IMG/VR virus record: IMGVR_UViG_3300009545_000018
Location: 1 to 64,000 of that record
Strand: one strand, 5' to 3'
DNA: 64,000 bases
Below are positions 21,414-54,913 of this stretch, piece by piece. The stretch's first letter is position 1; each line of letters starts with the position of its first letter. The translations under genes were made by a program, and so were the position numbers. The notes beneath the pieces are model-generated. The model was given only the letters and a program-made list of their open reading frames with translations. It was not told the DNA's origin and searched no databases.

Positions 21414-21677
21414 TTATGTTAAAAGTATTTTTCATTCATGTTTTTTATGGGCTTGCTATAACTTTAATAGCGTTAAGCTATTATCTTTACGATCAAAATT
21501 ATCAAAAAATGCATGAATGTCATGAACAGAAAAAGTAGTAAACTATGGGTTATTCTAGCTTTAGCTGCTGGATTTTTACTAGGGCATTACCTACGCGAAT
21601 CCTGGCAGTATTTAGAATCCAAGGACAATAAAATAATTTATAAGTAAATCGGAAGTTTTAACAAACCTGTAGAGCTT

Positions 21678-21692
21678 CCCATCCGCTAACGG
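21678..21692 (+). promoter_or_regulatory. CCCATC-N3-TAACGG motif
   Basis: CCCATCCGCTAACGG. Confidence 0.8.
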
Positions 21693-21778
21693 ATGAAGAG
21701 ATAAGATGTAAGATATGAATCAGCGTTACCGGTTTCCGGGACGGTATGGTAAATATCAAAATAAAAGGAGAAATTAAA

Positions 21779-22141
21779 ATGAATCTTTCTAATGTTGTGG
21801 TGCGTAACAAGAATGGTGCTGTGGATACGAAGGCTTCGGTTACTGCTTTTAAGGCAGAGTTGGATAGCCTTATTGCTGCGGAAAAGACTGAGAGTGCGGT
21901 ATTTGAAGATGCGGCTCATGCTGCGTTTGATAAGTACCCTGGTACGGCAATTTCGATGCCTGCCTTGTGTGCAGCAATTACGGTTGCTATGAATGCGGAG
22001 CCTGTTAACCATGCAGCTCTTACTGAACGGGCTCGTAAGTACATTCAGAACAACTCGGTTGGTGAGAAGTCGATCTTTACCATCACTAAAGGTAAGGGTG
22101 GCGGGGTGCGCCGTCGTTCGGATATTCCGGTCGAGAGCTAA
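21779..22141 (+). CDS. KGKGGG family DNA-binding protein, copy 3
   Basis: AAAGGAG SD; FTITKGKGGGVRRRSDIP. Confidence 0.8.
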   Translation: MNLSNVVVRNKNGAVDTKASVTAFKAELDSLIAAEKTESAVFEDAAHAAFDKYPGTAISMPALCAAITVAMNAEPVNHAALTERARKYIQNNSVGEKSIFTITKGKGGGVRRRSDIPVES

Positions 22142-22418
22142 TCCAAAGTAGGTTAGGTGGTCTCCCAAAAACACCAATTTCTATTAGTGAGATTACATCA
22201 ACAAGTTTGCAAACTTGTTTCAATCTAATAGGACTAATCAAGCAAGTAATCATACATATGGTACAGGCTATATGTAGAGATCGACAAGTGCTAGCATCTA
22301 ATAATGCTGTAGCATAACTATAAATATCCGCTTGATAATAAAAACCTGCTTAATATTTAGGTTTGGTGTTATTTGCCCATGATTTAAGTTTAAATCAAAA
22401 AACACCTTTTAATTAAAA

Positions 22419-22642
22419 TCGCCTAAGGATTATGGGTGAAAAGTTATTAACGTAAGTAAAATAACGAAGATCAGTAATATATTCAGAACTGGAGCCTTAA
22501 ATATTTAAGGCAGGAGAGAAGTTAACTGATAAGGGTAGCTAAAGTAATTTGGAGTAAAACAATAGTAAAATAATTGTTAGCCAAAGATGATTAAATCATT
22601 TAATTATTAGAACGATAATTATCACAGTGTTCCTCAACCTTG
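22419..22642 (+). ncRNA. structured ncRNA, copy 1 of a duplicated element
   Basis: Colinear with 31887-32160; shared stems with compensatory changes. Confidence 0.7.
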
Positions 22643-22649
22643 TTTTTAA

Positions 22650-22994
22650 ATGAAAAGATTATATATTCTTTTGTTTGCAATTTTGTTAATCATTATCGCA
22701 ATTGGCTTAATGGTTTACTTTAAACCAGTCAGCACAGATGATCTAACAGACTTAGCATTAAAAGAATACTTTTCATGTGTTGAAGAAAAACATAATGAAA
22801 ACCTTTGTTTAAATGAGTCTTCAAAAGTTTATCAGTTTCTTAATAAATTAGATGTTGAAGATAAATTAAAACATCCTATCCGAAATGGATTTGGAGAAAA
22901 AGAAGAGTTTAATAGGATTGCTAGTAAATGTCTTGCCACTAAAGAATGTACAACTTACTCTTGCTTAAACTATCAAATGGATTTATGTAAATGA
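22650..22994 (+). CDS. membrane-anchored hypothetical protein
   Basis: N-terminal TM. Confidence 0.7.
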   Translation: MKRLYILLFAILLIIIAIGLMVYFKPVSTDDLTDLALKEYFSCVEEKHNENLCLNESSKVYQFLNKLDVEDKLKHPIRNGFGEKEEFNRIASKCLATKECTTYSCLNYQMDLCK

Positions 22995-31836: not shown

Positions 31837-31853
31837 TATGCTGTAAGCCCCTT

Positions 31854-31868
31854 CCCATCGAGTAACGG
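31854..31868 (+). promoter_or_regulatory. CCCATC-N3-TAACGG motif in front of the ncRNA
   Basis: The +30 position (~31884) coincides with the start of the duplicated element. Confidence 0.8.
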
Positions 31869-31886
31869 GGGAGTCTACGATGAAAC

Positions 31887-32160
31887 TCGCCTGAGGATTG
31901 TGGGTGAGAAAGTTATTAGAGTAATCGAAATAACGAAGGTCAACGTCGTTCAGAACCGGAGCCTTAATATTTAATAAAATTAAGGCAGGAGAGAAGCAGA
32001 TTGACAAGGGCAGCTAAGATGACTATGTTTCTCTTAGAGTAAAATAATATATTAATATTATTAGCCAAGAATGATTTAAATCATTCAGTTATTATTTAAT
32101 AATAACTATCACCTAAGGGACCAGCTTCAGTATCGCGCAGTATAATCATCCTCGGTTAGG
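31887..32160 (+). ncRNA. structured ncRNA, copy 2 of a duplicated element
   Basis: Colinear with 22419-22642; closing stem CTGAGGAT/ATCCTCGG; own promoter motif. Confidence 0.7.
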
Positions 32161-32868
32161 AATTAATGTCTCTTATTAAGAATATTTTACTAGCTATTTT
32201 ACTTTGGATATTTGCATTAGTATTTTATCTAATGTTAGGTTTCTGGATGTTAACTGGTTGGTTAAGAGATCATGGTCCTAAGTTTACTAAACCACTTTTT
32301 ATTTGGTTTGCCGGTCCTGCAATGCATAAGGAAAAATCATGAACGAAAAACAGCGAGTACCAAGCCCTAATGAACGACAAATCGAAATTTGGAAGCAATG
32401 CTGGGATTTCTTAGGTGGCACTAAATTGTGGTCAAGTGTTTTAAAGAAATGAATAAGCTAAAACATTTACTTAAGACGTTTGTGTATACTTTACTATTAT
32501 TCTTTATAGTTGCAGTATATTTTTATATGATAAACTTTTTTCCATGGGTCGCAATAGTTATTGGTATAACAGTAATATTTTGTCTTGCCTGGTCATTTAT
32601 TTATGTTGTATCTAAAAACAAATGAAAAAAGAAATTAAAAAATTATTAATTGCTATGTTTGGGGCGGCATTTTTACTTGCAATAACTATATTATGTACAA
32701 TATTCCCTGCATTTAGAATTATTGCAATGTTTTTGTTGTTAACACTTCTTATTTATGTATTACTAAAATACAATGAGCATGAAGATTTAAAATAAATTTA
32801 AAGAAACTATTTATTCGAAAATTAATTATAACTGAATCGGTATAACCGAGTGCAAAGGAACAGTTGAA

Positions 32869-33138: not shown

Positions 33139-33462
33139 ATGTCAAATAACTTAAGAGATGAAATTAATGAGACTTTGGAGCAATTAAAGGTTTTCAGTAG
33201 GAAATTAGCTAACACTGTAGATATTTTAGAGAAAACAGCTAATGCTCCAGCTGCTACCAATAACTCAGCAATGGATTTAATTTCTGATTTAAAGAAGCAT
33301 CAGTGGGTAGAAAAGACTAAGTTCAGCACGGCACTAACGGGCGTTCATAAGTCTTTATTTCGTGATGCTAATATTAAGCTTGCTAATAGGATTGCAACTG
33401 AACGAGAAGCTTTAGCTCATCGTAATCCCATTAAGATTTCTAAAAAGAAAATCGAAGATTAA
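33139..33462 (+). CDS. hypothetical protein
   Basis: 107-aa ORF. Confidence 0.75.
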   Translation: MSNNLRDEINETLEQLKVFSRKLANTVDILEKTANAPAATNNSAMDLISDLKKHQWVEKTKFSTALTGVHKSLFRDANIKLANRIATEREALAHRNPIKISKKKIED

Positions 33463-33797
33463 TGAAATCTGAAATTACTTATGATGATTTTGCTAAACTA
33501 GATATTCGAGTTGGTACCATTACAAAAGCAGAAAGAATTCCGAAGAGCAAAAAACTTCTCAAATTAGAAGTTTTCTTTGGTTCTGAAATTGGTAGTCGAA
33601 CGATTTTGGCAGGCATTGCTAGTAGTTATGATCCTGAAGGAGCCGAAGGATTAAAAGTAATGGCGATTATTAATTTAGCCCCGCGCCAAATGATGGGGGA
33701 AACTTCTCATGGAATGTTGTTAGCAGGCATGACTTCTACTAATGGATTACAATTGGCAGAATGTTATGGAGCAGATGACGGTGCCGAAATCGGATAA
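33462..33797 (+). CDS. tRNA-binding OB-fold protein (Trbp111/CsaA/MetRS C-domain)
   Basis: YDDFAKLDIRVGTI...KLLKL...RTILAGI...NLAPR.MMG.TSHGMLL. Confidence 0.9.
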   Translation: MKSEITYDDFAKLDIRVGTITKAERIPKSKKLLKLEVFFGSEIGSRTILAGIASSYDPEGAEGLKVMAIINLAPRQMMGETSHGMLLAGMTSTNGLQLAECYGADDGAEIG

Positions 33798-38047: not shown

Positions 38048-38054
38048 TAAGGCT

Positions 38055-38069
38055 CCCATCATGTAACGG
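38055..38069 (+). promoter_or_regulatory. CCCATC-N3-TAACGG motif
   Basis: CCCATCATGTAACGG. Confidence 0.8.
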
Positions 38070-38098
38070 CAGCAACATCCTTTATTTAAGGTAAACAA

Positions 38099-38314
38099 AT
38101 GTCATTTGAAGAAATTACTAATAATGAATTGGTTATTAATCTGACCCCAATAGATTTATTAATTCATGCTCGTCATTTATATTTATCTGCAGCTAAAGAT
38201 TTATTAAAGAGCCCTGCTCAAGGTGATATGAATCTTGGTTTACAATGCGCTCAAACTGTTGAATCCTTACAGCAAGCAATTGATATTGAACTTTTGCCAT
38301 ATGAAAACTCATAA
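38099..38314 (+). CDS. paralog of 1813..2055
   Basis: HARHLYLSAAKDLLK. Confidence 0.75.
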   Translation: MSFEEITNNELVINLTPIDLLIHARHLYLSAAKDLLKSPAQGDMNLGLQCAQTVESLQQAIDIELLPYENS

Positions 38315-38480
38315 TATTGATAATTTTTCTCAGCAAGAAATAGAAGAAACTTTACAAAGCCTTGTTAAAAAAGGATGCATAAAAGCTATAGATAATAATG
38401 GAGAAATTACCTATGAGCTAACAGATATCGGAGAGGCTTTTATTAATCATTCTGATTCAGATCCATCTACTCAAAATTAA
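38301..38480 (+). CDS. wHTH-like fragment
   Basis: LQSLVKKGCI...YELTDIG. Confidence 0.55.
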   Translation: MKTHNIDNFSQQEIEETLQSLVKKGCIKAIDNNGEITYELTDIGEAFINHSDSDPSTQN

Positions 38481-38489
38481 AACTTAAAT

Positions 38490-38900
38490 CTTAGGTTCTT
38501 TACTATAAGTAAGATATCAATTATAGTAAGTGGTGATTTAGCTAATTGCCATAGTTTATTAATTAGTTTCTAATTAATAATTAGCTTAAGCGGGTTCCAA
38601 TAACTGTATCAATTGGAGGCGCTGGAATTCCGTCTTATAATATCCATAGTTTTTTCGTCGTCTTGTTGTCTAGATAAAAACAAGCTTCTTTAGCTCCGTC
38701 TCTAAGAGCGAATCTAATCTAAGAGGGTATTTGTACTATAGTTATACCAAACCTAAATCAATAGAGGCTCTGTCTTGCCAAACCGACAGCAACATAATTA
38801 CTACTTATCTGTTGTAAAATAGTTAATTCTCGTTCTATGATTAAGTTGCAACTAAATCATTTAATCTGAGTTATAAGTAGAAATTTTATCCCACTTTAAT
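38490..38900. ncRNA. candidate large structured RNA (intergenic, ~410 nt)
   Basis: No ORF in the track; nested inverted repeats TTAGGTT/AACCTAA, TTACTATAA/TTATAGTAA, AGCTAATT/AATTAGCT, TCCAAT/ATTGGA, CTTGTT/AACAAG. Confidence 0.45.
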
Positions 38901-38910
38901 GTGAGGTTTT

Positions 38911-39165
38911 ATGAAAGATGATGACAAAAATCTATCTATAGAAGAAGTTGATGCATTAATTTTTCTTTCGAAGAAAAACATTTCTTCTTTATCAAAAGAA
39001 CATGCAAATGTAGTAAATAATAGATTTTGGGCAACCACTGTTTCTGCTAGTGATTTTTATTGTTTTATTTGTAATAAAGATATTAAATATACAAATAAAG
39101 ATCTGCGCTTTCCAGCTGCACAGCATGGCAGAGAGCATCTTAAAGATATAAAAGCGTTCTTATGA
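38911..39165 (+). CDS. KAFx-tail protein, C2H2-like class
   Basis: CFIC...HGREH...DIKAFL. Confidence 0.75.
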   Translation: MKDDDKNLSIEEVDALIFLSKKNISSLSKEHANVVNNRFWATTVSASDFYCFICNKDIKYTNKDLRFPAAQHGREHLKDIKAFL

Positions 39166-39410
39166 TTTCTAATGAAGAATTAAAGGCTTTAAATTTATTA
39201 GTAGTACATAATAAATCTACACCTCCTGAATATAAAGTTTTTGCATCTAATACTGGTGCCTGCGCTACAATATTAAACTACGATGATTTAAATAAATGTG
39301 AAATTATTTGTCTTGTTTGTTTAACCTCATTTATAATTGATCCATCAGATCAATCTGAATGGCAGAAACATCTTTTAAGTCATTTAAATAAAATTAAAGC
39401 TTTTATATGA
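39162..39410 (+). CDS. KAFx-tail protein, C2H2-like class
   Basis: ALNLL...CLVC...HLLSH...KIKAFI. Confidence 0.75.
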   Translation: MISNEELKALNLLVVHNKSTPPEYKVFASNTGACATILNYDDLNKCEIICLVCLTSFIIDPSDQSEWQKHLLSHLNKIKAFI

Positions 39411-39745
39411 AATATTTAGAATTAGCTGCTCGGATTGCGCAAGGTGCCGCCTGGCATGAAAAACATTTTTTATTGGGAGCTGTTGCTATTCGTAACGACG
39501 GAGCTATAGTAACAGCAACAAATATCAGAACTCAGAACCGTGAACATTCGGCTCATGCTGAATTTAGATGCCTCCGCAAATCAGGTTCAGGTTCTGTACT
39601 TTATGTGGCACGTATTGATCGTTTTGGCGAATGGGCTATGGCTAAACCATGTGAACTTTGTCAATCTCTTATTAAAAATAAGAGAGTAAAAAAAGTTTTT
39701 TATACCATCTCTCCAAAAGAATTTGGCGTAATGGAATTATATTAA
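39407..39745 (+). CDS. zinc-dependent nucleoside/nucleotide deaminase (CDA superfamily)
   Basis: HAE and PCxxC motifs. Confidence 0.85.
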   Translation: MKYLELAARIAQGAAWHEKHFLLGAVAIRNDGAIVTATNIRTQNREHSAHAEFRCLRKSGSGSVLYVARIDRFGEWAMAKPCELCQSLIKNKRVKKVFYTISPKEFGVMELY

Positions 39746-39757
39746 TTAGGAGTTTGT

Positions 39758-40039
39758 ATGTCATTAGAAAGTGAATTTCAAAAAGTATATGAAGATAACA
39801 TAATTTTAATTAGAGCTAAAGTTGCCCAAGCTTCAAAGATTCTAAACGAAGCTATTTCAATCGCTGAGGAGCATGGTATTCCATTTGACTCTAACATATC
39901 AGAGATTGGTCAACAATATACCCCAGAATCTTTTCATAAAAAGTGGAACTCTTTAGATGATGAGAAGCTGGCTGAGCTTGGACTTTATATCTATGTTAGC
40001 GAATATAATACTGGCTGGGAAAACAGCGCAATATGTTGA
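39758..40039 (+). CDS. WxSSxxxC-tail family protein
   Basis: MSLESEF...GWENSAIC; AGGAG SD. Confidence 0.75.
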   Translation: MSLESEFQKVYEDNIILIRAKVAQASKILNEAISIAEEHGIPFDSNISEIGQQYTPESFHKKWNSLDDEKLAELGLYIYVSEYNTGWENSAIC

Positions 40040-40046
40040 GTCTATT

Positions 40047-40277
40047 ATGTCTAATTTAAATTCAGAATTCGAAGCAATACAAGAAACAATTACAGAAAAA
40101 ATAAGAAGTGCACAAAAACTCTTAGCAGAAGCCTCCAAATTAGCAACTGAAAACAGAATATCAGTTGATAAGGGTGATGCAAATAATCTTATGGATTTAG
40201 TTAATGATCTTCCTGTTTATGATTGGGAAGAATCAGAATATGAAGATTCTTGGTCTAGTTCAACATTGAGTTGTTAA
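40047..40277 (+). CDS. WxSSxxxC-tail family protein
   Basis: MSNLNSEF...SWSSSTLSC. Confidence 0.7.
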   Translation: MSNLNSEFEAIQETITEKIRSAQKLLAEASKLATENRISVDKGDANNLMDLVNDLPVYDWEESEYEDSWSSSTLSC

Positions 40278-40278
40278 T

Positions 40279-41190
40279 ATGATATTAATTGGAAGTAGAG
40301 CTTTAAAACTTCGGGCAGGTTCTTTATTTGTAAGACAAATAAGAGACTTTGACTTTGTCTGTACTGAAGATGAAGTTATGAACTGGCTAAGCAAAAACTT
40401 ATCCAAGTTTAAAGAATTTAAAGCTTATTCATTAGAAGGCAAGCACGATAAGTATATCGTTGAGGGAGATTCTATTTGCGAATTTGAATTGGTTAAACCA
40501 AATACTAGCACTGAACTATTAGTTAAATTGGTGGAGTCTGATCCGGATACCATTGAAACTTCCTTTGGTTTACTGCCCAGTTTAGATATGCTATTCACAA
40601 TTAAATCTTCCCATAAGCACTTGAAGAATAGCCCGCATTTTTGGAAGAACCTGAGTGACTATCACTTTATGAAACGATTGGGAGCGAAGGTTCGACCGGA
40701 ATGGCAAAGCTTTTTAAAGATGCGCGAACGCGAAACCTATAATTATTTGCATCCTAAACTTAATCAAAGCAAGAAAGACTTCTTTTCTGATGACGGTTTG
40801 ACCTATACTTTTGATCACGATACGATTCATATGGCTGTAAAGCTTTATGATAAGCCGGCTTATTCTTATTTTAAGAAAGATGATGCCGAAGTAGAGACTA
40901 GTAAAGAAAAATTTCTTGCATGTTCTCATGATATTCAAATTGCTTCTGTATTAGAAGAATCAGCAGTTTTAGCTATTGAGCGTTCATTGGTGCCACACCC
41001 AGATATTCTAACTCCAGAACAAGCTTGGCGCTTTGCCTTTTCGAAAATATGCAGCAGCATCGCTTCCGGATGGTGGAGGGATTTTGCTTATGAAAATGCT
41101 CCAGAAATTGTATCCAAATATCCAAAAGATTACTTTGAAAAGTTTCAACAAGGACTTTCTAGTGGCTTAGTGAAGCCTCATCTAAGCTAA
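40279..41190 (+). CDS. putative nucleotidyltransferase-fold phage protein
   Basis: LIGSRAL...RDFDF (GS...DxD); C-terminal FDHD.IH and EE..V.A.ER. Confidence 0.6.
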   Translation: MILIGSRALKLRAGSLFVRQIRDFDFVCTEDEVMNWLSKNLSKFKEFKAYSLEGKHDKYIVEGDSICEFELVKPNTSTELLVKLVESDPDTIETSFGLLPSLDMLFTIKSSHKHLKNSPHFWKNLSDYHFMKRLGAKVRPEWQSFLKMRERETYNYLHPKLNQSKKDFFSDDGLTYTFDHDTIHMAVKLYDKPAYSYFKKDDAEVETSKEKFLACSHDIQIASVLEESAVLAIERSLVPHPDILTPEQAWRFAFSKICSSIASGWWRDFAYENAPEIVSKYPKDYFEKFQQGLSSGLVKPHLS

Positions 41191-41450
41191 TGATTTGTCC
41201 AAGTTGTTTTGAACAATTAAAAAAATATACATCAACATCATTAAGTCTTTATTATCAATATTGTGATAGCGCTATTTGTAAACAAAATAGTTTCAGTATA
41301 CAATTTTGGGATAAAAATAATCTTAATATTTTAAAAAATGGAAATGTTATATATTCAAAGCAATTTGGAAAAACAGATCTAAATTATAATTTAGACAGTA
41401 AAATTCTAATTAATTTATATAAAATACTAAATAACAAAGCTTTTCTTTAA
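41190..41450 (+). CDS. KAFx-tail protein, CPxC class
   Basis: MICPSCF...LNNKAFL. Confidence 0.75.
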   Translation: MICPSCFEQLKKYTSTSLSLYYQYCDSAICKQNSFSIQFWDKNNLNILKNGNVIYSKQFGKTDLNYNLDSKILINLYKILNNKAFL

Positions 41451-41451
41451 A

Positions 41452-41736
41452 ATGCTCTGTCCAATTTGTTTTCAAAAATGCAGCAAAGTACCAAATGAAT
41501 ATGGTATAAATATAATGTATGATTATTATTGCTATGGTGATAGTCATATAGATGGATCACTCATTGAGTTTGATAATGAAAATAATTTTGTAGTTAAAAA
41601 ATACAACTTAAATAAAATGTATTTTGAAAATACATACCGTATGGAAAATGGTATAGGTAACGGCACTATAACTAAAGAAGTTGAATTAATCATTTCTAAT
41701 TTGACAAAGATTTTTAAATGCAAAGGTTTTATATAA
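41452..41736 (+). CDS. KAFx-tail protein, CPxC class
   Basis: MLCPICF...FKCKGFI. Confidence 0.75.
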   Translation: MLCPICFQKCSKVPNEYGINIMYDYYCYGDSHIDGSLIEFDNENNFVVKKYNLNKMYFENTYRMENGIGNGTITKEVELIISNLTKIFKCKGFI

Positions 41737-41737
41737 G

Positions 41738-42430
41738 ATGTTAAATTTAATTGCTATGATACTTGTGATCTGTTTACTTCTAGTAGATATATTTCTAGTC
41801 GAATTAGAAAACTTTGGATGGATTACTCTTTCGATAATTTTTACTGGTGTAATTATTTGTGATTTCAAGTTATGGGGGATTCCATATTGGATAGCAGCAA
41901 ATCTAAAGTTATGTATTGGATTTTTTGTCCTTTACTTTGTAGTCGGCGTGCTTTGGTCCTTTATCAAATGGTATTCTTATTTAATTAATTATCGAGATCA
42001 ATTCGCAACAATTAAAGATAATTTTATTTTTAATAAAAGGAATCTTATTGAAAGTCAATATGAGTGGGCGTCTGCCAATCACATTGAAATTAATAATAAA
42101 ATAGTTTCAAAAGAAGTCTTGCCTTTTGATTTCTATGCGCATCATAATATATTGGATAACTATTATGCTCAAGTAAAAGATGGTAAAAAAATCTATAATG
42201 CTTTCGTTGAATCCGAAGTAGAGTATAAAGAGTTTTATAAGCCTGTAGCAGCTAGTAATAAAGGAAGAATTGTGGCTTGGATCTGCTATTGGCCATGGAG
42301 TTTGGTTGCCACCATTGTTAATGATCCCATTCGTCGTTTAGTAGAATGGATCTTCCGATTCTTAAAAGAAACCTATCAAAAAATGTCAGATAAAATATTT
42401 GCTGATTTTCCAGATAAAAAACGTTATTAA
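41738..42430 (+). CDS. multi-pass membrane protein
   Basis: Several TM segments; WSFIKW and WICYWPWS motifs. Confidence 0.8.
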   Translation: MLNLIAMILVICLLLVDIFLVELENFGWITLSIIFTGVIICDFKLWGIPYWIAANLKLCIGFFVLYFVVGVLWSFIKWYSYLINYRDQFATIKDNFIFNKRNLIESQYEWASANHIEINNKIVSKEVLPFDFYAHHNILDNYYAQVKDGKKIYNAFVESEVEYKEFYKPVAASNKGRIVAWICYWPWSLVATIVNDPIRRLVEWIFRFLKETYQKMSDKIFADFPDKKRY

Positions 42431-42675
42431 TGATTTGTCCCATTTGTTTTCAAGAATTAAGACTATATAAAGGTGTACCTGATTCAAAGGTATGTATCAA
42501 TCACGATATATGGTTTTCTTTTAAGAGTAAAAACAAATATCGCCTTATAAAAGGAGATACATTAACAATTGAATATGAAGTAGATAAGGGATCTATTATT
42601 ATAAATAATGGAACTATACCTGCCGAAGTATTAAATAATTTAGATAAAATTTTAAAACAAAAAGCATTTATATAA
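42430..42675 (+). CDS. KAFx-tail protein, CPxC class
   Basis: MICPICF...LKQKAFI. Confidence 0.75.
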   Translation: MICPICFQELRLYKGVPDSKVCINHDIWFSFKSKNKYRLIKGDTLTIEYEVDKGSIIINNGTIPAEVLNNLDKILKQKAFI

Positions 42676-42918
42676 ATGATTTGTTTTCAAGAGTTAGGAT
42701 CGTATCAATACGTACCTAATTCAAAGATATGTGGTAATCATAATTTTACCTTCTGTTTTGTTAATATTAATAACTATTATTTTATGGCAAATCATGGATC
42801 AACCGCAGGATGTGTATATGAAGTAAAAAATGGTAAAGTCACACATCATGATGGTAGTATATCTTCTTCAATATTAGAGAACTTAAACAGGATTTTAAGT
42901 CAGAAAATATTTATTTAA
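42676..42918 (+). CDS. KAFx-tail protein (tandem paralog lacking the first CPI)
   Basis: MICFQEL...LSQKIFI. Confidence 0.7.
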   Translation: MICFQELGSYQYVPNSKICGNHNFTFCFVNINNYYFMANHGSTAGCVYEVKNGKVTHHDGSISSSILENLNRILSQKIFI

Positions 42919-43200
42919 ATGACTTTTGAAAAAATTATAATTGAAATAAAAAGAATTCATAGCATATCAACTAATAAAGATAGCAGTATTTTTATTACAT
43001 ATAAAGGCACCAGTGGTGGAGTTACTAAACCATGGAATATTAAAATTGATACCAAAGAAGCGGATGGCACCTCTGAAATAGAGGCTGCCTTAAATCTTTT
43101 TAATATAGTAAAAGATGATTTATCTGAACGAATTAAGTTTATGGAAAATCAAGCCCGTCAATTAAAAGAAGCATTGAATAATAGTTCTAAGGCAAATTAA
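42919..43200 (+). CDS. hypothetical protein
   Basis: 93-aa ORF. Confidence 0.7.
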   Translation: MTFEKIIIEIKRIHSISTNKDSSIFITYKGTSGGVTKPWNIKIDTKEADGTSEIEAALNLFNIVKDDLSERIKFMENQARQLKEALNNSSKAN

Positions 43201-43454
43201 TGTGTGATGAATGTGAAGAATTTACGACCGGAGTTAACACAACCAGTCATTATAATTTTACAGTTGTTCACAGATTAAACAAAAATAAATCACACTTTCA
43301 TTGCCTATCTGGTCCAGCTATCATATATTATGACAACAATCAAATTACCACTAGAAAGTGGTATATTAATGGTAGTTATGTTCTTGTTTCTTCTCAAGAA
43401 GAATTTGAAAATAGTAAAGAATACAGAGAGTGGAAGCTAAAGGCTTTTAAATAA
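43200..43454 (+). CDS. KAFx-tail protein, HxxxGPA-repeat class
   Basis: HCLSGPA...WYING...SQEEFE...WKLKAFK. Confidence 0.8.
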   Translation: MCDECEEFTTGVNTTSHYNFTVVHRLNKNKSHFHCLSGPAIIYYDNNQITTRKWYINGSYVLVSSQEEFENSKEYREWKLKAFK

Positions 43455-43730
43455 ATGTGTAATGAGTGTGTTGAAACTAAAATAAACGTTACAATATTAT
43501 TTCCTAATAATATTCAGGATTATGATACTGTAATAAATTATCATCATATTAATAAAAATAAAATACATTGGCATTGTTTATCGGGTCCTGCCCGAATCTT
43601 TTTAAAGAACAATTCAATAGTTGGTAGAGATTGGTATATTGATGGTAAACTTGTTTTAACAGACTCTTGTCAAGAAGAATTTGAAAAGACTACACAATAT
43701 AGAGAGTGGAAGTTAAAAGTTTTTAAATGA
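43455..43730 (+). CDS. KAFx-tail protein, HxxxGPA-repeat class
   Basis: HCLSGPA...WYIDG...WKLKVFK. Confidence 0.8.
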   Translation: MCNECVETKINVTILFPNNIQDYDTVINYHHINKNKIHWHCLSGPARIFLKNNSIVGRDWYIDGKLVLTDSCQEEFEKTTQYREWKLKVFK

Positions 43731-44062
43731 GTTCCAACAGAAATTTATACTCCGTTACAGATCAATATAGAACTACTTGGTATGATGGAGACATGCTTCA
43801 TCGAGAAGATGGTCCTGCTATTATTAATACTGATGGTTCCAAACTTTGGTATTATAATGATCATTTACATAGGAATGATGGTCCTGCCTCAACACATCCT
43901 GATGGTGATGAAATGTGGTTTACTCATGGCAAACTACATAGGCTAGATGGTCCTGCTGTCATTTTTGGTGGAATTAAAGAATGGTGGATTAATGATGAAC
44001 AAATTAACTGTTCCTCTCAAGAAGAGTTTGAGAAAATTTTAAAACTAAAAATATTTTGGTAA
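43727..44062 (+). CDS. KAFx-tail protein with three HRxDGPA repeats
   Basis: LHREDGPA, LHRNDGPA, LHRLDGPA; SQEEFEKILKLKIFW. Confidence 0.85.
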   Translation: MSSNRNLYSVTDQYRTTWYDGDMLHREDGPAIINTDGSKLWYYNDHLHRNDGPASTHPDGDEMWFTHGKLHRLDGPAVIFGGIKEWWINDEQINCSSQEEFEKILKLKIFW

Positions 44063-44082
44063 GTAAAAGAAAGAGCATCATC

Positions 44083-45183
44083 ATGGGAGATTGGGCACCA
44101 CAAGTAGTTAAAATAGAAAAAGTTGTTAATCATCCTAATGCCGATGCATTAGATATAGCAACAGTACTAGGAGATTATCCTGTTATTGTTAAACGCAATG
44201 AATATAAAATAGATGATCTGGCATGTTATTTACCAATAGATTCAATCGTTCAAGATACAGATCAATTTTATTTTCTATGCCCCAAAGCATATGAAAAATA
44301 TGAAGATGATAAAGGGAACATTCAACAGCGACAAATGGGTCCCAAATACTCAATTGGGTCGGTTCCAGAGAAGTATCGTATTCTTAAAGCTAAGAAGATT
44401 CGTAACGTGTATAGTCAGGGCATGTTAGTACCATTAACTAATCAAAGTAATCTACAAATTGGTGACTCTGTAATAGCCTTATTAGGGCTGAAAAAATGGG
44501 AAGAGGAAGAGGAAGATAATATTCCTAACGCTAAAAAGTCTAAAGGAGCGAATGCAGCTCCAGCACCTAAGGGATGGTCTATTCCATTCTATGATATTGA
44601 AGGGCTCCGTAAGTATATTGCTTGCTTAAATGCTGATGAAGAAATTGTTTTAACAGAAAAAATTCATGGTAGCAATGCTGCTTTCTGTCATGATGGTGAG
44701 AAGTTATGGGTTAAATCTAGAAATTTCTATAAGAAGATGGATGAAGATGATCCATGGTGGGACATAGCCATTCGTTATGATTTAGTTAATAAACTATCTC
44801 AATTCCCTATGAAAATCTTTTTTGGAGAATTATATGGAAATAATAAAGGGTTTCGTTATGATTGTGAGTTAATTAATGGTGCCATGCACTCTAAGATTAA
44901 ATTCTTTGATGTATGTGATGCTAAGACCGGTCTGTACTTAGATTATGACGATTTTGTTTCTATTGTTAAATCTGCGGGATTAGAAGCGGTTCCCGAATTA
45001 TATCGTGGAGTTTGGAAAGGTAAAGAGGAAATGTATCCTTATGCTGAAGGATTAACTACTCTGGGCGGCAAACATGTTAGGGAAGGTTTCGTATTACGTA
45101 CCACCAAAGAGCATTTTGAGCCTAAACTTAATTCCCGTATGGTTATAAAATTAGTTGGAGAAGGATACAATTTAGTTAAATAA
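44083..45183 (+). CDS. RNA ligase, DRB0094/Rnl2-like
   Basis: N-terminal HPNADAL OB module; TEKIHGSN, FGE, FFD, REGFV and terminal K motifs. Confidence 0.85.
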   Translation: MGDWAPQVVKIEKVVNHPNADALDIATVLGDYPVIVKRNEYKIDDLACYLPIDSIVQDTDQFYFLCPKAYEKYEDDKGNIQQRQMGPKYSIGSVPEKYRILKAKKIRNVYSQGMLVPLTNQSNLQIGDSVIALLGLKKWEEEEEDNIPNAKKSKGANAAPAPKGWSIPFYDIEGLRKYIACLNADEEIVLTEKIHGSNAAFCHDGEKLWVKSRNFYKKMDEDDPWWDIAIRYDLVNKLSQFPMKIFFGELYGNNKGFRYDCELINGAMHSKIKFFDVCDAKTGLYLDYDDFVSIVKSAGLEAVPELYRGVWKGKEEMYPYAEGLTTLGGKHVREGFVLRTTKEHFEPKLNSRMVIKLVGEGYNLVK

Positions 45184-45209
45184 TAAATTTAGATGAAAAG
45201 GTTTTATAA

Positions 45210-45557
45210 ATGAATTTAATTATTACTAAATGTTTAGATAGACTAAAATTAGTTACGTTTATTAGACATAAGTTAACTAGATATACAATTCTTCCAAAAG
45301 AGGCTTTTTATATAGCAGATCATTTGCCATACATAAAAGAATGTTTATGGAGAGATGAAGCCGATCATTTGGCTAATGAATTAAATGGCATTGCCGAATT
45401 TACTATTGAACTTACTCAAGAAGAAATTAATCATAAATTGCAAGAAGATTTTTTAAATAAAAAATATACTGAAGCTCAGGAATTTTATGATTCCTTATCA
45501 AAAGAAGACCAAGAAAAAATAGATTTATTAATACAAAGAAATCAGCCAATAGGGTAA
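45210..45557 (+). CDS. hypothetical protein
   Basis: 115-aa ORF. Confidence 0.7.
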   Translation: MNLIITKCLDRLKLVTFIRHKLTRYTILPKEAFYIADHLPYIKECLWRDEADHLANELNGIAEFTIELTQEEINHKLQEDFLNKKYTEAQEFYDSLSKEDQEKIDLLIQRNQPIG

Positions 45558-45564
45558 TCTTAAT

Positions 45565-45579
45565 CCCATCGACTAACGG
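45565..45579 (+). promoter_or_regulatory. CCCATC-N3-TAACGG motif
   Basis: ATG 32 nt on. Confidence 0.8.
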
Positions 45580-45596
45580 CAGGGATCCTTTTAACA

Positions 45597-46106
45597 ATGG
45601 AAATCGAAGAACTAATTAAGCAGTTACCAGACCACTGGGAAATGTGGACTGCTGAAGAGTGTAAAAACATCTGGTCAGATAGTTGTAGAGAATATGATAA
45701 GCCTATCTTTCTTCGTAAAGATGGATTGGCTCGTATTTATTTTTGTAGCCAACCCAGTACTGATTGTGTCTTTTCAATTGCTTTTGACTATCATTACGAT
45801 GGGGAGTGTCGCGGCACTTTAGAAGAAGCTATTAGATATTCTGATTGGTATGTAGAAGCTTTCCCATTACAATTTAATACATGTGTAAACTGCACCAAGA
45901 AAGCAGTTTGGTATTATGAACCGGTTTCGGAGGGCTCACTTAACAATAAATATTATTGTGATGATTGTGTTCCCACCAGAGGTTGTAACTGTAATATTGA
46001 TTCTGATGGTCATGAAGAACTACAAGAAGTTAATGGTATTTTAAAATCATTTCCATGTTGTGAGTACCGATATGACATTTATGGTTTTCCTGTAAATGAA
46101 AATTAA
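45597..46106 (+). CDS. Cys-rich hypothetical protein
   Basis: CxxC...AVWYY...CDDCV..RGC.C...PCCEY. Confidence 0.75.
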   Translation: MEIEELIKQLPDHWEMWTAEECKNIWSDSCREYDKPIFLRKDGLARIYFCSQPSTDCVFSIAFDYHYDGECRGTLEEAIRYSDWYVEAFPLQFNTCVNCTKKAVWYYEPVSEGSLNNKYYCDDCVPTRGCNCNIDSDGHEELQEVNGILKSFPCCEYRYDIYGFPVNEN

Positions 46107-46205
46107 TTATAAATAATTATTTTGACCTTGTCTTCAATTTTAAAAAATGCATGTTATATTTATAAGCGAGGGGAAATATACCAATTTAAAACAAGGAGAA
46201 AAATT

Positions 46206-46616
46206 ATGTCAAATAAATTAAAATTATATAATCCTTTTGCCTTATCATCTTTGGTAGATAACACTTTAGATGATTCATTTTTTGGATCATTCTTTAAAAT
46301 AAATGATTCTTATAATAATGTTAAATTTTATACTCATGATAAATCATTAGTTATAACAATTGAAGCGCCCGGATTTTCTGAAGAAGAAATTAAAATTTCT
46401 TTAAAAGGAAGAGTTTTATCAGTCAAAGGAGATAGTCTTTACAATGGAGTTCAACGTTCCATAACTCATTCCTTTAACGTACCCAACGGTTATAATTTAG
46501 AGGGTTCTTTAGAAGCAAAGTTAGAAAAAGGAATATTAACAATTAGTCTTCCTCATGAAAATATAGAGCCTGTAGTTGAGCCTGATACTAAAAATATACC
46601 AGTAAAATCTGTGTAA
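46206..46616 (+). CDS. small heat-shock protein (Hsp20)
   Basis: APGFSEEEIKI...LSVKG...AKLEKGILTISLP; AGGAG SD. Confidence 0.9.
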   Translation: MSNKLKLYNPFALSSLVDNTLDDSFFGSFFKINDSYNNVKFYTHDKSLVITIEAPGFSEEEIKISLKGRVLSVKGDSLYNGVQRSITHSFNVPNGYNLEGSLEAKLEKGILTISLPHENIEPVVEPDTKNIPVKSV

Positions 46617-46686
46617 AATAATTTAATTAAGATAATAGGGCAGCATAATTAATTACGCTTCCTTATTTTATTATAAGAAGAAATCA

Positions 46687-47058
46687 ATGAACATTTCAGA
46701 ATTTGAAGATAAAATTGAGCATCCTAATCATAAAAAAGAGTTTAGAAAACTAAACACTTTAAGTAAAGATAAGTTGTTCCAAAAACTTTATAATGATAAA
46801 TTATTATTAAGAAATAATATTTATTATAATTATAATACTCTGACTCAGGTAGTAGATAATATTGTTAAAGATATTTATTCTTCTATTGATGAGATTATGA
46901 AAAATAAGGAACCTAACGAGGAAGTATTTTTCTTTTTAGATAATAACGGACCTTATAATTTACATTTGATTTGTTGGAAACATTCCAATACTGTAGAATT
47001 AGAGACGATATATAAGAAAGCTGTGAGATATACTAAATTAGGATCATTGGTGGATTAA
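46687..47058 (+). CDS. hypothetical protein
   Basis: 123-aa ORF. Confidence 0.7.
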   Translation: MNISEFEDKIEHPNHKKEFRKLNTLSKDKLFQKLYNDKLLLRNNIYYNYNTLTQVVDNIVKDIYSSIDEIMKNKEPNEEVFFFLDNNGPYNLHLICWKHSNTVELETIYKKAVRYTKLGSLVD

Positions 47059-47066
47059 GTTGAAAG

Positions 47067-47329
47067 AAGGATGAACCGGCGATCTATTATAGGCGCAAAG
47101 GCGAAGTAGCTTATTTTTATAATGGAAAAATGCATAGAGACAAGGTCCTGCTTATATCGATACTATTAATGGTGTGCGTTATTACCAACATGGAAAACGT
47201 CATCGTTTAGATGGTCCTGCTATTGATATGATTAATGGTATAAAACTTTGGTTTTATAATGATATCCAAGTTAATTGTCATTCTCAAGAAGAATTTGAAA
47301 GTTTAATAAAGCTAAAAGCGTTTTGGTAA
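47067..47329 (+). pseudogene. frameshifted HRxDGPA-repeat KAFx-tail gene
   Basis: ...YFYNGKMHRD, 1-nt loss near 47142, then GPAYID...HRLDGPA...SQEEFESLIKLKAFW*. Confidence 0.7.
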
Positions 47330-47332
47330 ATA

Positions 47333-47992
47333 ATGAAAATTGTTGCAGTAAGCGATACTCATGGCACCCACCGCCAAGTAGATTTAAGTAATATTGAAGC
47401 TGATACTCTAATAGTAGCTGGAGATATTACTAATACGGGAGAACTATCTCTTATTGAAGATGTTTGTGATTGGGCAAGCAATCTTCAATTTAAAAATAAA
47501 GTTTTAATCTGTGGTAACCATGAAGTCGGAATCTCGGCTGGACCTAAAAGAAAGAAAGCTATTAAATTATTAAAAAATCATTTTACTTATCTGGAAAATA
47601 GCTTTGAAATGATAGATGGTTATAAGTTTTATGGATCTCCTGCAACTCCATATTTTTGTGGTTGGGAATGGAATTATAACCGAGGCATTACTATTGCAGA
47701 ACAATGGGCAAAGATTCCGCTGGATGTAGATGTTTTGATTACTCATGGTCCTCCTTATGGGGTTTTAGATTTAGTAGAAGATAATATATATAATGTGGGC
47801 AGAGACTTACATCAAGGGTGTGCCGACTTAACTAATAAGTTAATGGAACTAACTAATCTTAAGGCGCATGTTTTTGGGCACCTTCATCATAGTCATGGAC
47901 TTTTAAAAATAAATAACACTATATTTGCAAATAGTGCCATATGCAATGAAAATTATCAGCCAATTAACCCACCTCATATTTTTGAGATTTAA
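47333..47992 (+). CDS. calcineurin-like metallophosphoesterase (MPPED-type)
   Basis: SDTH, AGD, GNHE, THGPP, GHLH. Confidence 0.9.
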   Translation: MKIVAVSDTHGTHRQVDLSNIEADTLIVAGDITNTGELSLIEDVCDWASNLQFKNKVLICGNHEVGISAGPKRKKAIKLLKNHFTYLENSFEMIDGYKFYGSPATPYFCGWEWNYNRGITIAEQWAKIPLDVDVLITHGPPYGVLDLVEDNIYNVGRDLHQGCADLTNKLMELTNLKAHVFGHLHHSHGLLKINNTIFANSAICNENYQPINPPHIFEI

Positions 47993-48764
47993 TATAATTA
48001 TAAATATTTTTCCATTTTCTTTCTAATAATATAGAATAATATTTATTAATATTTAATATTTTAGCTAAATCAATAACATCTTGTTTTCGGCGCACCCTAA
48101 TTCTTTTCCATTTGTTTTTAGGAAAGAAATATTTAATAGATCCTTTAAATCCCAAATTTTTAATTTGTTGTTCATACCAATTCATAATCAAGTTATTACC
48201 AACAATATCTATGTCATAATGTTTATTTAAAGTAAAATTAATATGACCATCAGCATCAAGTAATCCTAATAAAAATGGTTTTATATATTTTTTTGGTATA
48301 ATAGGCTTTACGGGGTTGTAAGTCTTATTAGGAACAATTCCATATTTAAATAAATTTTTATCTATTCTTTTAGAATAAATATTAAGTCTACAAACTGTAT
48401 TATTTTGATAATATTTTATATTTGAATAATCTATATTCAGCCAATCACAAAAATTTTGCAATATACATACGTCCTTTATATTTAAAGAAATAGTAATTAT
48501 TTTATTATTTCTATTCGATATTAACGACCCATCACCTAATACAAATCCCCAAAAATAATATAAATTATCGCTCTTTTTTGTGAAGAAATTTTCATTATAC
48601 TTTATTCTAAAAGAGGAAGGATCTCTAACTTTAATTTTATTTTTGATCAAAAATTGTTTAATAGACCATCTGCTGACATTGTATTCAACAGATAATTTTG
48701 TTAAAGTGACTCCCGAGTTGTAATCATTTAATATTTTATTTTTGTTGTTTTCCAACAGTTGCAT
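47964..48764 (-). CDS. free-standing LAGLIDADG homing endonuclease
   Basis: YFWGFVLGDGS and FLLGLLDADGH; N-terminal HTH. Confidence 0.9.
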   Translation of the reverse strand: MQLLENNKNKILNDYNSGVTLTKLSVEYNVSRWSIKQFLIKNKIKVRDPSSFRIKYNENFFTKKSDNLYYFWGFVLGDGSLISNRNNKIITISLNIKDVCILQNFCDWLNIDYSNIKYYQNNTVCRLNIYSKRIDKNLFKYGIVPNKTYNPVKPIIPKKYIKPFLLGLLDADGHINFTLNKHYDIDIVGNNLIMNWYEQQIKNLGFKGSIKYFFPKNKWKRIRVRRKQDVIDLAKILNINKYYSILLERKWKNIYNYIKSQKYEVG

Positions 48765-48861
48765 GAATACATACCAAACTATTGATATACATTAATAAGA
48801 TATAATATTTGTATAAACAATATTACTCGTAATTTTTGAGATATAAAGAATAGGATAATAA

Positions 48862-49428: not shown

Positions 49429-49500
49429 TTTATTATTCTAAATTAATGAAATACTAATAATAAAGAATATTGTTAATTGCTTTGAAACAAGGGATTAACA

Positions 49501-50676: not shown

Positions 50677-50705
50677 ATTCTAAGTTAATAGAAAGATATT
50701 TTTAC

Positions 50706-51017
50706 TTGAAAGAGCTTGAGCTAAAAATATATCTAGATGATGAAAGAAAATCACCAGAAGGTTGGATTCAGGTATTCTCTTATCAAGAGTGTATTAATAT
50801 GCTTTGCCAATTTAATCCAACTAATCTTTCTTTAGATCATGATTTAGGTGAAGAGAAAACTGGTTATGATGTAATAAAATGGATTGAACAAAAAGTATTT
50901 AAGGATTCAAATTACCAACCACCTATTATAGTTATTCACTCTGCTAATCCGGCGGGTCGGCAGAATATGGAACGAGGCATCAAATCAATTCAGAAAATCG
51001 TAAATTCAAGGATGTGA
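50706..51017 (+). CDS. cyclic-phosphate-processing receiver-domain protein
   Basis: YLDDER.P, LSLDHDLG, TGYDV, HSANPAG. Confidence 0.8.
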   Translation: MKELELKIYLDDERKSPEGWIQVFSYQECINMLCQFNPTNLSLDHDLGEEKTGYDVIKWIEQKVFKDSNYQPPIIVIHSANPAGRQNMERGIKSIQKIVNSRM

Positions 51018-51552: not shown

Positions 51553-51553
51553 T

Positions 51554-54909: not shown

Positions 54910-54913
54910 AAAT

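What the first reader, a model, noticed from the sequence alone, without database searches (positions are those of the whole stretch)
31887..32160. Duplicated ~230-270 nt structured non-coding RNA (22419-22642 and 31887-32160) with compensatory base changes
Seen: both copies share ordered blocks TCGCCTRAGGATTRTGGGTGA, AAAGTTATTA, AAATAACGAAG, TTCAGAACYGGAGCCTTAA, TTAAGGCAGGAGAGAAG, AAGGGYAGCTAA, TTAGCCAA, ATGATT..AATCATT and TATCAC. Length differences fall mainly in hairpin loops. Compensatory changes: ATCAG/CTGAT versus GTCAA/TTGAC (two pairs) and AATTAT/ATAATT versus AGTTAT/ATAACT (one pair). Copy 2 begins at about the predicted +30 start of its own motif (31854). Inference: an independently transcribed multi-stem RNA with conserved purine-rich junctions, as in ribozymes or large orphan ncRNAs. 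A few blocks loosely recall my memory of the raiA-motif RNA, but I cannot confirm any family.
Basis: partly seen in the sequence, partly recalled or inferred. Interest (0 to 1): 0.75.

Follow-up and report, generated by a model that had tools for sequence, protein, structure and literature searches.

The report
Orphan structured RNA in jumbo phage
Two diverged copies of a 207-226-nt non-coding element with a conserved multi-helix RNA fold sit just upstream of small membrane-protein genes in an uncultivated 448-kb phage; it matches no known RNA family, no relative was found elsewhere, and its role is still a guess.

Summary
Window 22419-22625 and 31887-32112 are the only two copies of one element in a 447,763-bp, 31% GC phage genome from a rhizosphere metagenome. 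They are about 72% identical.

Every indel lies in an unpaired column, and none of the 60 predicted base pairs is broken in either copy. Eight or nine pairs show compensatory double changes. A GUAA tetraloop is kept while its closing pairs covary. Three different controls reject chance, and the + strand folds better than the - strand. No frame is open in both copies.

No Rfam 15 family matches, raiA included. No homologue turned up in 21 related phage records, about 45 kb of sister-phage promoter-rich-arm contigs, 95 metagenome loci, 12 genome loci or 151 Bacteroidota genomes.

Copy 2 starts 18 nt after one of 67 phage-specific promoter-like motifs. It has no terminator and runs into a 58-aa membrane-protein ORF. 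Copy 1 has no such motif of its own. A sister phage has the orthologous genes at that site but not the element.

My best guess, at low confidence, is a modular cis-acting 5' leader RNA. A processed trans-acting RNA is nearly as likely. It is a credible new RNA family, but only two sequences and no expression data support it.

The parts
22419..22625 (+). Copy 1 of the structured element (207 nt). Helices: P1 22419-25/22433-39; P2 22443-48/22460-65 with an inner AC/GT stem and GUAA loop; P3 22470-22530; P4 three-way 22534-22582; P5 22585-22601; P6 22602-22620.
31887..32112 (+). Copy 2 of the structured element (226 nt). Helices: P1 31887-93/31901-07; P2 31912-17/31929-34 with an inner GA/TC stem and GUAA loop; P3 31939-32005; P4 32009-32066; P5 32069-32086; P6 32087-32107.
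31852..31868 (+). Phage-specific promoter-like motif TTCCCATCGAGTAACGG, 18 nt upstream of copy 2. It is one of 67 copies, all on the + strand.
31869..31886 (+). Non-homologous 5' segment between the motif and the conserved core. It holds a 4-codon mini-ORF (ATG at 31880, stop at 31892-94) that copy 1 does not share.
32113..32165 (+). Non-conserved 53-nt linker between copy 2 and the next start codon. No terminator. It contains TCCTC 12 nt before the ATG.
32166..32342 (+). 58-aa ORF with two hydrophobic segments. It is the first gene of a roughly 6-kb run that lacks a further promoter motif; the next motif is at 38054.
22626..22649 (+). Non-conserved 24-nt linker between copy 1 and the next start codon. 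It contains TCCTC 14 nt before the ATG.
22650..22994 (+). 114-aa ORF with a hydrophobic N-terminus and a Cys-rich remainder. Its orthologue in sister phage contig L218 (39% identity, E = 2e-27) has no element in front of it.
21676..22141 (+). Nearest intact promoter-like motif upstream of copy 1 (21676-21692), with the 120-aa protein gene it drives (21779-22141). This is the likely source of transcripts that cover copy 1.
22142..22418 (+). Spacer upstream of copy 1. It is homologous to the spacer in sister phages L218, L219 and L220 and ends in the hairpin GGTTTGGTGT..AAAACACC. In L218 the next gene's ATG follows that hairpin after 8 nt.

Best explanation
The two loci encode paralogous copies of a previously undescribed structured RNA domain of 207 and 226 nt. 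The fold is six helical elements joined by conserved purine-rich linkers: a P1 hairpin with an AGGAUUR loop, P2 capped by a GUAA tetraloop, a long three-tiered P3, a three-way P4, then P5 and P6.

It is read on the + strand as part of phage transcripts from the promoter-rich arm of the genome. I infer that this arm is early-expressed.

I propose that it acts in cis as a modular 5' leader. Copy 2 would be transcribed from the phage-specific motif at 31852-31868. Copy 1 would be transcribed by read-through from the motif at 21676. Each copy ends 24-53 nt before the start codon of a small membrane-protein gene, with no terminator between. The folded domain would set how much of that gene, or of the promoter-less operon behind it, is expressed. 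It could do so by binding a ligand or protein, or by its structure alone. The effect could be on translation initiation, on message stability or processing, or on read-through by the polymerase.

Shown here: the duplication, the non-coding status, the strand, selection for the fold, the promoter-motif context, the lack of a terminator, and the modular presence or absence.

Inferred, not shown: transcription itself, cis action, and the regulatory output.
For: A structured RNA under selection:
- None of 60 pairs is broken in either copy, and 8-9 pairs carry compensatory changes.
- Three independent nulls reject chance.
- All 28 gap columns are unpaired.
- The GUAA loop is kept while its closing pairs covary.
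- The + strand consensus energy is -39.85, against -29.5 for the reverse complement.
- No frame is open in both copies, even if TAG is read through.

Leader context:
- The motif is present 67 times, all on the + strand. The ATG lies 15 nt after it in 26 of the 67 cases.
- Copy 2's site is the outlier, with 296 nt to the next ORF.
- The same motif also precedes two tRNA genes, so it acts on RNA synthesis or processing rather than translation.
- No terminator-like site follows either copy.
- The two downstream genes are not paralogous, yet both encode small hydrophobic proteins. One RNA motif in front of unrelated genes is the classic signature of a cis-regulator.

Modularity:
- A sister phage has the same gene pair and spacer without the element.
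Against: - There are no expression data; no RNA run was listed.
- Only two sequences exist, both from one phage. A second assembly, L217, is identical. A proper covariation test such as R-scape is therefore impossible.
- No expression platform was found. There is no terminator or antiterminator. Pairing between the conserved 5' block and the translation-initiation region is no better than for shuffled linkers (fraction of shuffles at least as stable: 0.34 and 0.24).
- The orthologue of the copy 1 gene works without the element in the sister phage, so the element is not needed for that gene's basic expression.
- In a genome this tightly packed, lying next to an ORF is weak evidence for cis action.
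Confidence: 0.4

Rival explanations
1. It is a stand-alone stable non-coding RNA gene. The domain would be cut out of the transcript and act in trans, for example by binding a host or phage protein or the ribosome, or by forming an RNA-only assembly. This would resemble other orphan phage-associated RNAs such as GOLLD and ROOL.
For: - The unit of duplication is the RNA domain alone. The flanks and downstream genes are unrelated.
- Copy 2 has its own promoter-like motif, and the same motif drives two tRNA genes.
- The element is dispensable at the copy 1 site in a sister phage.
- Conserved linkers and a GNRA loop suggest a compact tertiary fold.
Against: - No terminator or recognisable processing signal marks the 3' end.
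- Copy 1 has no intact promoter motif.
- No covariance-model match to GOLLD, ROOL, raiA or any other Rfam family.
- No expression data.
Confidence: 0.27
2. It is a promoter-proximal element that modifies the polymerase, as HK022 put, lambda nut or the Bacillus EAR element do. The nascent RNA would make the transcribing polymerase resistant to termination, so that long promoter-less gene runs are read.
For: - There are two copies per genome. Copy 2 follows a promoter-like motif directly, and copy 1 lies in a transcribed spacer.
- Both sit where promoter motifs thin out from about every 0.5 kb to every 2-19 kb. Copy 2 heads a 6.2-kb stretch without a motif.
Against: - Other long motif-free stretches (38054-45564, 45564-57129, 57129-76020) have no such element.
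- Terminator-like sites are not enriched over shuffled sequence (8 against 5.0 +/- 1.9).
- The known elements of this kind are 65-120 nt and unrelated in sequence. That statement rests on my own knowledge.
Confidence: 0.08
3. It is a selfish or mobile structured element, such as a degenerate ORF-less intron, a ribozyme-bearing insertion or a MITE-like repeat. The fold would be kept for its own propagation or for removal from the transcript.
For: - There is presence/absence polymorphism with a clean empty site in sister phage L218.
- Both copies sit within a few tens of nucleotides upstream of a start codon.
- GNRA loops and purine-rich junctions are also typical of group I introns. That statement rests on my own knowledge.
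Against: - No Rfam hit to group I or II introns or to any small ribozyme, even at E <= 10.
- Copy 1 lies in a non-coding spacer, so there are no exons to rejoin.
- Only 2 nt separate P4 from P5, which leaves no room for the P7/P3 strands of a group I core.
- No terminal inverted repeats. The only possible target duplication is TTTTAA, in AT-rich DNA (sequence).
- No TnpB gene in the genome.
- There are only two copies, and they are 28% diverged.
Confidence: 0.08
4. It has no RNA function. It could be a DNA-level element such as an origin or a binding array, or just a duplicated AT-rich spacer whose hairpins survive by chance or by gene conversion.
For: - Only two sequences exist.
- AT-rich DNA forms many hairpins. 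The single-sequence fold z-scores are modest (-2.6 and -1.0).
- No homologue was found anywhere.
Against: - Substitutions avoid breaking pairs far more than random placement would.
- Indels avoid stems entirely.
- Eight G-U pairs make the fold strand-specific: -39.85 forward against -29.5 reverse.
- Blocks of 17-21 identical bases alternate with loops of different length and sequence. Simple gene conversion does not produce that pattern.
Confidence: 0.12

Closest known systems
Riboswitch-type and other cis-regulatory 5' leader RNAs, meaning motifs found upstream of several unrelated genes, often for membrane proteins
   Same: It lies directly upstream of the start codons of two unrelated genes on the same strand. 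It has a multi-helix junction with conserved purine-rich linkers and variable terminal loops. It is a modular unit that appears at different loci.
   Different: No Rfam 15 model matches. No terminator/antiterminator or significant sequestering of the start region was found. No ligand is implied by the neighbouring genes. It is known from one phage only.
Large orphan phage-associated non-coding RNAs (GOLLD, ROOL) and the raiA motif
   Same: Phage genome context with many tRNA genes nearby, an elaborate fold, and unknown function.
   Different: No covariance-model match even at E <= 10. From my own knowledge, GOLLD and ROOL are several hundred nucleotides long and far more widespread, and raiA is a bacterial motif. 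This element is 207-226 nt and confined to one genome.
HK022 put, lambda nut and the EAR processive-antitermination RNAs
   Same: Two promoter-proximal copies of a cis-acting RNA in phage operons. This is an analogy of context only.
   Different: Size and sequence are unrelated. There is no evidence for terminators that need to be overcome. Other long operons lack the element.
PeSL-type cassettes of T4-like phages (early promoter plus stem-loop repeats that shuffle small early genes; my own knowledge)
   Same: This genome has 67 copies of a short promoter-like motif. Several are fused to a recurring hairpin, ACAAGTTT..AAACTTGT, in an arm of small ORFs. Repeats of this kind could explain how a module is gained or lost at a site.
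   Different: The element is not the promoter/hairpin repeat itself. It is a 207-226-nt multi-helix domain whose structure is kept by compensatory change.
Small non-autonomous insertion repeats in transcribed spacers (MITE, ERIC and Correia-type)
   Same: Short, non-coding, inserted in a transcribed intergenic region, with an empty site in a relative.
   Different: No terminal inverted repeats and no clear target duplication. Only two copies, 28% diverged. The fold has several helices rather than one long palindrome.

Membership tests
   No raiA hit at the gathering threshold. None in sensitive mode at E <= 10 on either copy.
Any Rfam 15 family (4227 models, including GOLLD, ROOL, OLE, HEARO, riboswitches, small ribozymes and phage pRNA) | Covariance-model match at or near the gathering score | tested here: not met
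   Only tRNAs reach gathering in the window. The best hits on the two copies are 11-23 bits to snoRNA or miRNA models at E 0.4-8.
Group I intron | Covariance-model match | tested here: not met
   No Intron_gpI hit at E <= 10.
Group I intron | Interrupts a gene so that removal restores an open frame or a functional RNA | tested here: not met
   Copy 1 lies in a non-coding spacer. The sister phage's empty site is also non-coding. At copy 2 the frame of the 32166 ORF is closed by a stop at 32157.
Group I intron | P3-P7 pseudoknot core with a guanosine-binding site | tested here: inconclusive
   Only 2 nt separate P4 from P5 and 0 nt separate P5 from P6, which leaves no obvious strands for P7/P3. 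Pseudoknots cannot be settled with two sequences.
Transcription-terminating riboswitch or attenuator | Intrinsic terminator between the aptamer and the ORF, with a competing antiterminator | tested here: not met
   No terminator-like site in 22626-22649 or 32113-32165.
Translation-controlling riboswitch or leader | A conserved segment able to sequester the start region of the downstream ORF | tested here: inconclusive
   The 5' block can pair with pyrimidine tracts 7-18 nt before each ATG, but no better than with shuffled linkers (0.34 and 0.24). The start codons are about 50% unpaired in the ensemble.
MITE-like or IS200/IS605-derived element (omega-RNA) | Terminal inverted repeats or subterminal hairpins, a target duplication, and a cognate TnpA/TnpB in the genome | tested here: not met
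   The ends, TCGCCT... and ...TATCAC, are not inverted repeats. No TnpB zinc-ribbon domain in the genome. No omega-RNA family hit.
Independent non-coding RNA gene | Its own promoter and a defined 3' end | tested here: inconclusive
   Copy 2 has a promoter-like motif and copy 1 does not. No terminator follows either copy. No RNA data.

The most novel reading that the evidence does not exclude
This is a new class of complex-folded RNA, of riboswitch or ribozyme grade, or one that assembles into an RNA-only particle. A lineage of jumbo phages would carry it as a movable plug-in module placed in front of the start codons of membrane-protein genes. That would let the phage couple expression of those genes to a signal sensed directly by RNA early in infection.
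Probability: 0.15. Interest if true: 0.8.

Novelty: new variant of a known kind. Interest (0 to 1): 0.45.

Why it matters
If real, this adds a new family to the short list of elaborate non-coding RNAs in phages. GOLLD and ROOL are on that list, and their functions are still unknown.

It has two features that make it testable. Its promoter context is precisely defined. A sister phage offers a natural knock-out, with the same genes and spacer but no element.

It would also show that structured leader modules can be gained or lost in the hyperplastic, promoter-rich arms of jumbo phage genomes.

The weakness is that it is known from only one uncultivated phage. At present only biochemistry on synthetic RNA and wider database searches can take it further.

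Tried and rejected
Known families:
- Rfam in gathering and sensitive modes gave nothing.

Sequence searches for homologues, all negative:
- blastn against the phage collection and against E. coli genomes.
- Four exact-pattern scans of IMG/VR built on different conserved blocks.
- One metagenome scan returned 95 loci. Only the window's own contig scores with the model.
- One scan of prokaryote genome contigs returned 12 chance hits.

Covariance model R1, all negative:
- The window's own genome holds only the two copies.
- 19 records of the TerL clade. A 13-bit hit in G003 lies inside a nucleotidyltransferase ORF.
- 2 records found through the tRNA-binding protein.
- 4 bacterial MAGs plus 151 Bacteroidota genomes.
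- Sister-phage promoter-rich-arm contigs L216 and L218-L226. An 18-bit hit in L224/L225 is antisense inside an ORF and lacks P3.

Searches through neighbouring proteins:
- Protein searches on the flanking ORFs 22650 and 31471 found only themselves.

Ideas tested and dropped:
- Coding potential is rejected.
- Recoding of TAG as a sense codon is not supported.
- A 'decayed promoter' GCCCATGATTTAAGTT upstream of copy 1 is rejected. The sister phage that lacks the element has the homologous spacer sequence, so it is ancestral spacer.
- Pairing of the 5' block with the start region is not significant.
- Copy 1 contains the words CCUAAG...UAUGG of the classical 11-nt tetraloop receptor. The register leaves no flanking helices, and copy 2 reads CCUGAG...UGUGG. 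I treat this as a curiosity.
- Alternative pseudoknot or long-range pairings cannot be told apart with two sequences.

Other:
- No T7-like or multisubunit RNA polymerase gene was detected. The PF00940 search had no positive control, so its negative result is weak.
- No RNA sequencing run was listed.
- One model search failed internally.

Full report
**What the window is.** The window is the first 64 kb of a 447,763-bp virus record, JGI contig Ga0105237_10000004. It has 31% GC and almost all genes are on the + strand. The one public DNA run that holds it is a rhizosphere metagenome. The genome encodes a large terminase, rIIA, an NAD-dependent ligase and an SbcC-like nuclease. It also carries 37 tRNA genes. 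The nearest cultured phage shares only 25% identity in TerL. IMG/VR holds 225 TerL relatives at 70-89% identity, and some of those records are 350-446 kb long. This is therefore an uncultivated jumbo phage clade.

**The observation.** blastn gives 72% identity over 22419-22625 versus 31887-32115. blastn and a covariance model built from the pair (R1) find only these two copies in the genome. Homology begins at the AAA before TCGCC and ends at TATCAC (22625 and 32112). The flanks beyond those points are unrelated. The genes downstream of the two copies are not paralogues. The repeated unit is therefore the 207-nt or 226-nt element itself. No reading frame is open in both copies on either strand, even if TAG is read through.

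**Evidence for an RNA structure.** RNAalifold predicts 60 pairs in these helices:
- P1, a hairpin with an AGGAUUR loop.
- P2.
- P3, with three tiers separated by purine-rich internal loops.
- P4, a three-way junction with arms P4a and P4b.
- P5 and P6.

No pair is broken in either copy. Nine pairs changed on both sides and seven on one side through G-U. The covarying pairs lie in P2b (2), P3a (2), P4a, P4b, P5 and P6, and one more is an isolated pair. P2 keeps a GUAA tetraloop while its two closing pairs switch from AC/GU to GA/UC. All 28 gap columns are unpaired, 22 of them in hairpin loops. The linkers GAAAG, CGAAG, AAGGG and CCAA are conserved.

Three controls argue against chance:
- Column shuffles of the alignment give -13.0 +/- 3.5 kcal/mol against -39.85 observed (z = -7.7). 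They give 2.2 +/- 1.4 compensatory pairs against 9, with at most 7 in 300 shuffles.
- Sliding the 3' partners by 1-3 columns gives no compensatory pair.
- In a non-circular test the structure is predicted from one copy alone and the other copy's substitutions are placed at random. Broken pairs are 5 against 15.7 +/- 2.5 expected and compensatory pairs 6 against 1.5. The reciprocal test gives 6 against 13.3 and 6 against 2.3.

The + strand consensus folds at -39.85 and the reverse complement at -29.5. Eight G-U positions account for that difference. This fits an RNA read in the direction of all neighbouring genes.

There are limits to this evidence. With two sequences no R-scape-type test is possible. 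Single-sequence z-scores are modest, at -2.6 and -1.0. Alternatives cannot be resolved, such as a GGGUGA/UCACC closing helix in place of P1, or other long-range pairings.

**Genomic context.** A 16-17-nt motif, TCCCATCNNNTAACGG, occurs 67 times, always on the + strand. All but one copy lie in the two ends of the record, at 1.7-57 kb and 434-447.5 kb; the exception is at 76020, just before a tRNA gene. In 26 of the 67 cases an ATG follows exactly 15 nt later. The motif also directly precedes tRNA-Leu genes at 12053 and 76113. It therefore acts on RNA synthesis or processing, not on translation. I read it as a phage-specific promoter, probably early, but that is an inference. Sister-phage contigs use the same motif, while more distant TerL relatives do not. 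The genome encodes a sigma-70-family protein at about 382.7 kb. No T7-like or multisubunit polymerase was detected.

Copy 2 starts 18 nt after the motif at 31852-31868. The distance from that motif to the next ORF is 296 nt. That is the clear outlier among the 67 sites. Neither copy is followed by a terminator-like site. The start codon of a small hydrophobic protein follows 24 nt after copy 1 (114 aa) and 53 nt after copy 2 (58 aa). As the sequence stands, the element is a 5' leader.

**Relatives and an empty site.** No homologue of the RNA was found:
- in the phage collection;
- by four IMG/VR pattern scans;
- in 21 related phage records searched whole with R1;
- in 95 metagenome loci;
- in 12 genome loci;
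- in 155 bacterial genomes.

A profile of the 120-aa protein encoded just upstream of copy 1 did find sister phages. L217 is a second assembly of the same phage, and both RNA copies in it are identical. L218 comes from a different JGI sample and carries:
- the same promoter motif;
- a 71%-identical orthologue of that protein;
- a homologous spacer ending in the same hairpin, GGTTTGGTGT..AAAACACC;
- 8 nt later, the ATG of a 129-aa ORF that is 39% identical (E = 2e-27) to the ORF downstream of copy 1.

The element is absent between the hairpin and the ATG. Copy 1 is therefore a roughly 235-nt insertion just before a start codon, or else L218 has a clean deletion. About 45 kb of further contigs from at least five sister phages use the same motif and have no R1 match. 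The element is thus optional, modular and, so far, confined to one phage. There its two copies have diverged by 28% without damaging a single helix.

**What it most likely is.** I am fairly confident, at about 0.75, that this is a genuine structured RNA domain under selection. Its role is much less certain.

I favour a modular cis-acting leader, at 0.4. The same domain sits in front of two unrelated small membrane-protein genes, with no terminator, in a genome where leaders are normally 15 nt. One motif upstream of unrelated genes is the pattern by which regulatory leaders are usually recognised. Three points count against this reading:
- No expression platform was found.
- Pairing between the 5' block and the start region is not significant.
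- The sister phage expresses the orthologous gene without the element.

A processed, trans-acting stable RNA is nearly as likely, at 0.27. An antitermination-type element (0.08), a selfish or intron-like element (0.08) and a non-RNA or chance explanation (0.12) remain possible.

**Comparison with known systems.** The element is not a member of any Rfam 15 family, and raiA in particular fails. It fails the tested criteria for a group I intron, a terminator riboswitch and a MITE or omega-RNA element; the membership table gives details. In its context it resembles riboswitch-like leaders. In being an elaborate orphan phage RNA it resembles GOLLD and ROOL. A published survey of IMG/VR reported candidate RNAs of 29-151 nt that matched at least three regions, so it would not have captured this one (PMC10690425).

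**Verdict.** This is a real and statistically supported duplicated RNA-like structure, and it is a new family. It rests on two sequences from one uncultivated phage, and there are no expression or functional data. Interest is moderate.

Noticed in passing
window 1677-57144, one outlier at G000 76020, and G000 434386-447542: The promoter-like motif TCCCATCNNNTAACGG occurs 67 times, all on the + strand. All but one copy lie in the two ends of the record. An ATG follows exactly 15 nt later in 26 cases. The motif also precedes tRNA-Leu at 12053 and at 76113. Sister-phage contigs share the motif, but TerL relatives at about 79% identity do not.
   Followed up: partly
window 22200-22219; G000 about 434720, 438220 and 439900: A recurring hairpin, ACAAGTTT-loop-AAACTTGT, is fused directly to the promoter-like motif at three sites. 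A fourth copy at 22200-22219 is an insertion relative to the sister phages (alignment A4) and is followed by a degenerate motif, TTTCAATCTAATAGGAC. This recalls the promoter/stem-loop shuffling cassettes of T4-type phages.
   Followed up: partly
window 21779-22141 and 12403-12759 (a third paralogue lies elsewhere in G000): A paralogous family of GC-richer proteins of about 120 aa ends in KGKGGGVR. Each gene sits behind a promoter motif with a long leader that shares TAAGATGTAAGA. Each is followed by a spacer that is conserved in sister phages (L218-L220, L226). The leader and spacer may hold further conserved RNA elements. One quick fold of the spacer was not convincing.
   Followed up: partly
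G000 212881-213035: Two adjacent tRNA genes have a CUA anticodon (amber suppressors; ARAGORN labels them Pyl). TAG is a rare stop (10 of 274 long frames). Reading TAG through lengthens frames by only 4-25%, so recoding is not evident.
   Followed up: partly
window 33462-33797: A 111-aa protein with a tRNA-binding domain (PF01588, E = 7e-21) lies 1.3 kb downstream of copy 2 in the same motif-free gene run. An RNA ligase lies at 44056-45183.
   Followed up: no
window 3-1337: A sulfatase-family ORF (PF00884, E = 5e-45) runs off the start of the record. It could be an auxiliary gene or a sign of how the record was cut. The promoter-rich arm seems to continue across the record's ends.
   Followed up: no
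G000 382747-382866 (locus L215): A sigma-70 region 2 match (27 bits) lies in a 214-aa frame, so the phage encodes its own sigma factor. Whether it reads the TCCCATC motif is unknown.
   Followed up: no
window 31880-31894: A mini-ORF, ATG AAA CTC GCC TGA, lies 11 nt after the promoter motif and overlaps the 5' end of copy 2. Copy 1 has ATT AAA ATC GCC TAA at the same place, with no start codon. This is probably incidental, or a trace of the start codon of the cassette that the element entered.
   Followed up: partly
window 22423-22435: Copy 1 contains the two words of the classical 11-nt GNRA-tetraloop receptor, CCUAAG and UAUGG, separated by GAU. Copy 2 has CCUGAG and UGUGG. The register has no flanking helices, so this may be coincidence.
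   Followed up: partly
L217 (ENA ERZ27252310, 399,192-bp contig): A second public assembly holds the same phage with both RNA copies identical. It is not independent evidence.
   Followed up: yes
L226 3402-4141: A sister-phage contig has a 740-nt gap without a called gene after its copy of the 120-aa gene. The gap contains tRNA-like T-arm sequences and gives no R1 match.
   Followed up: no
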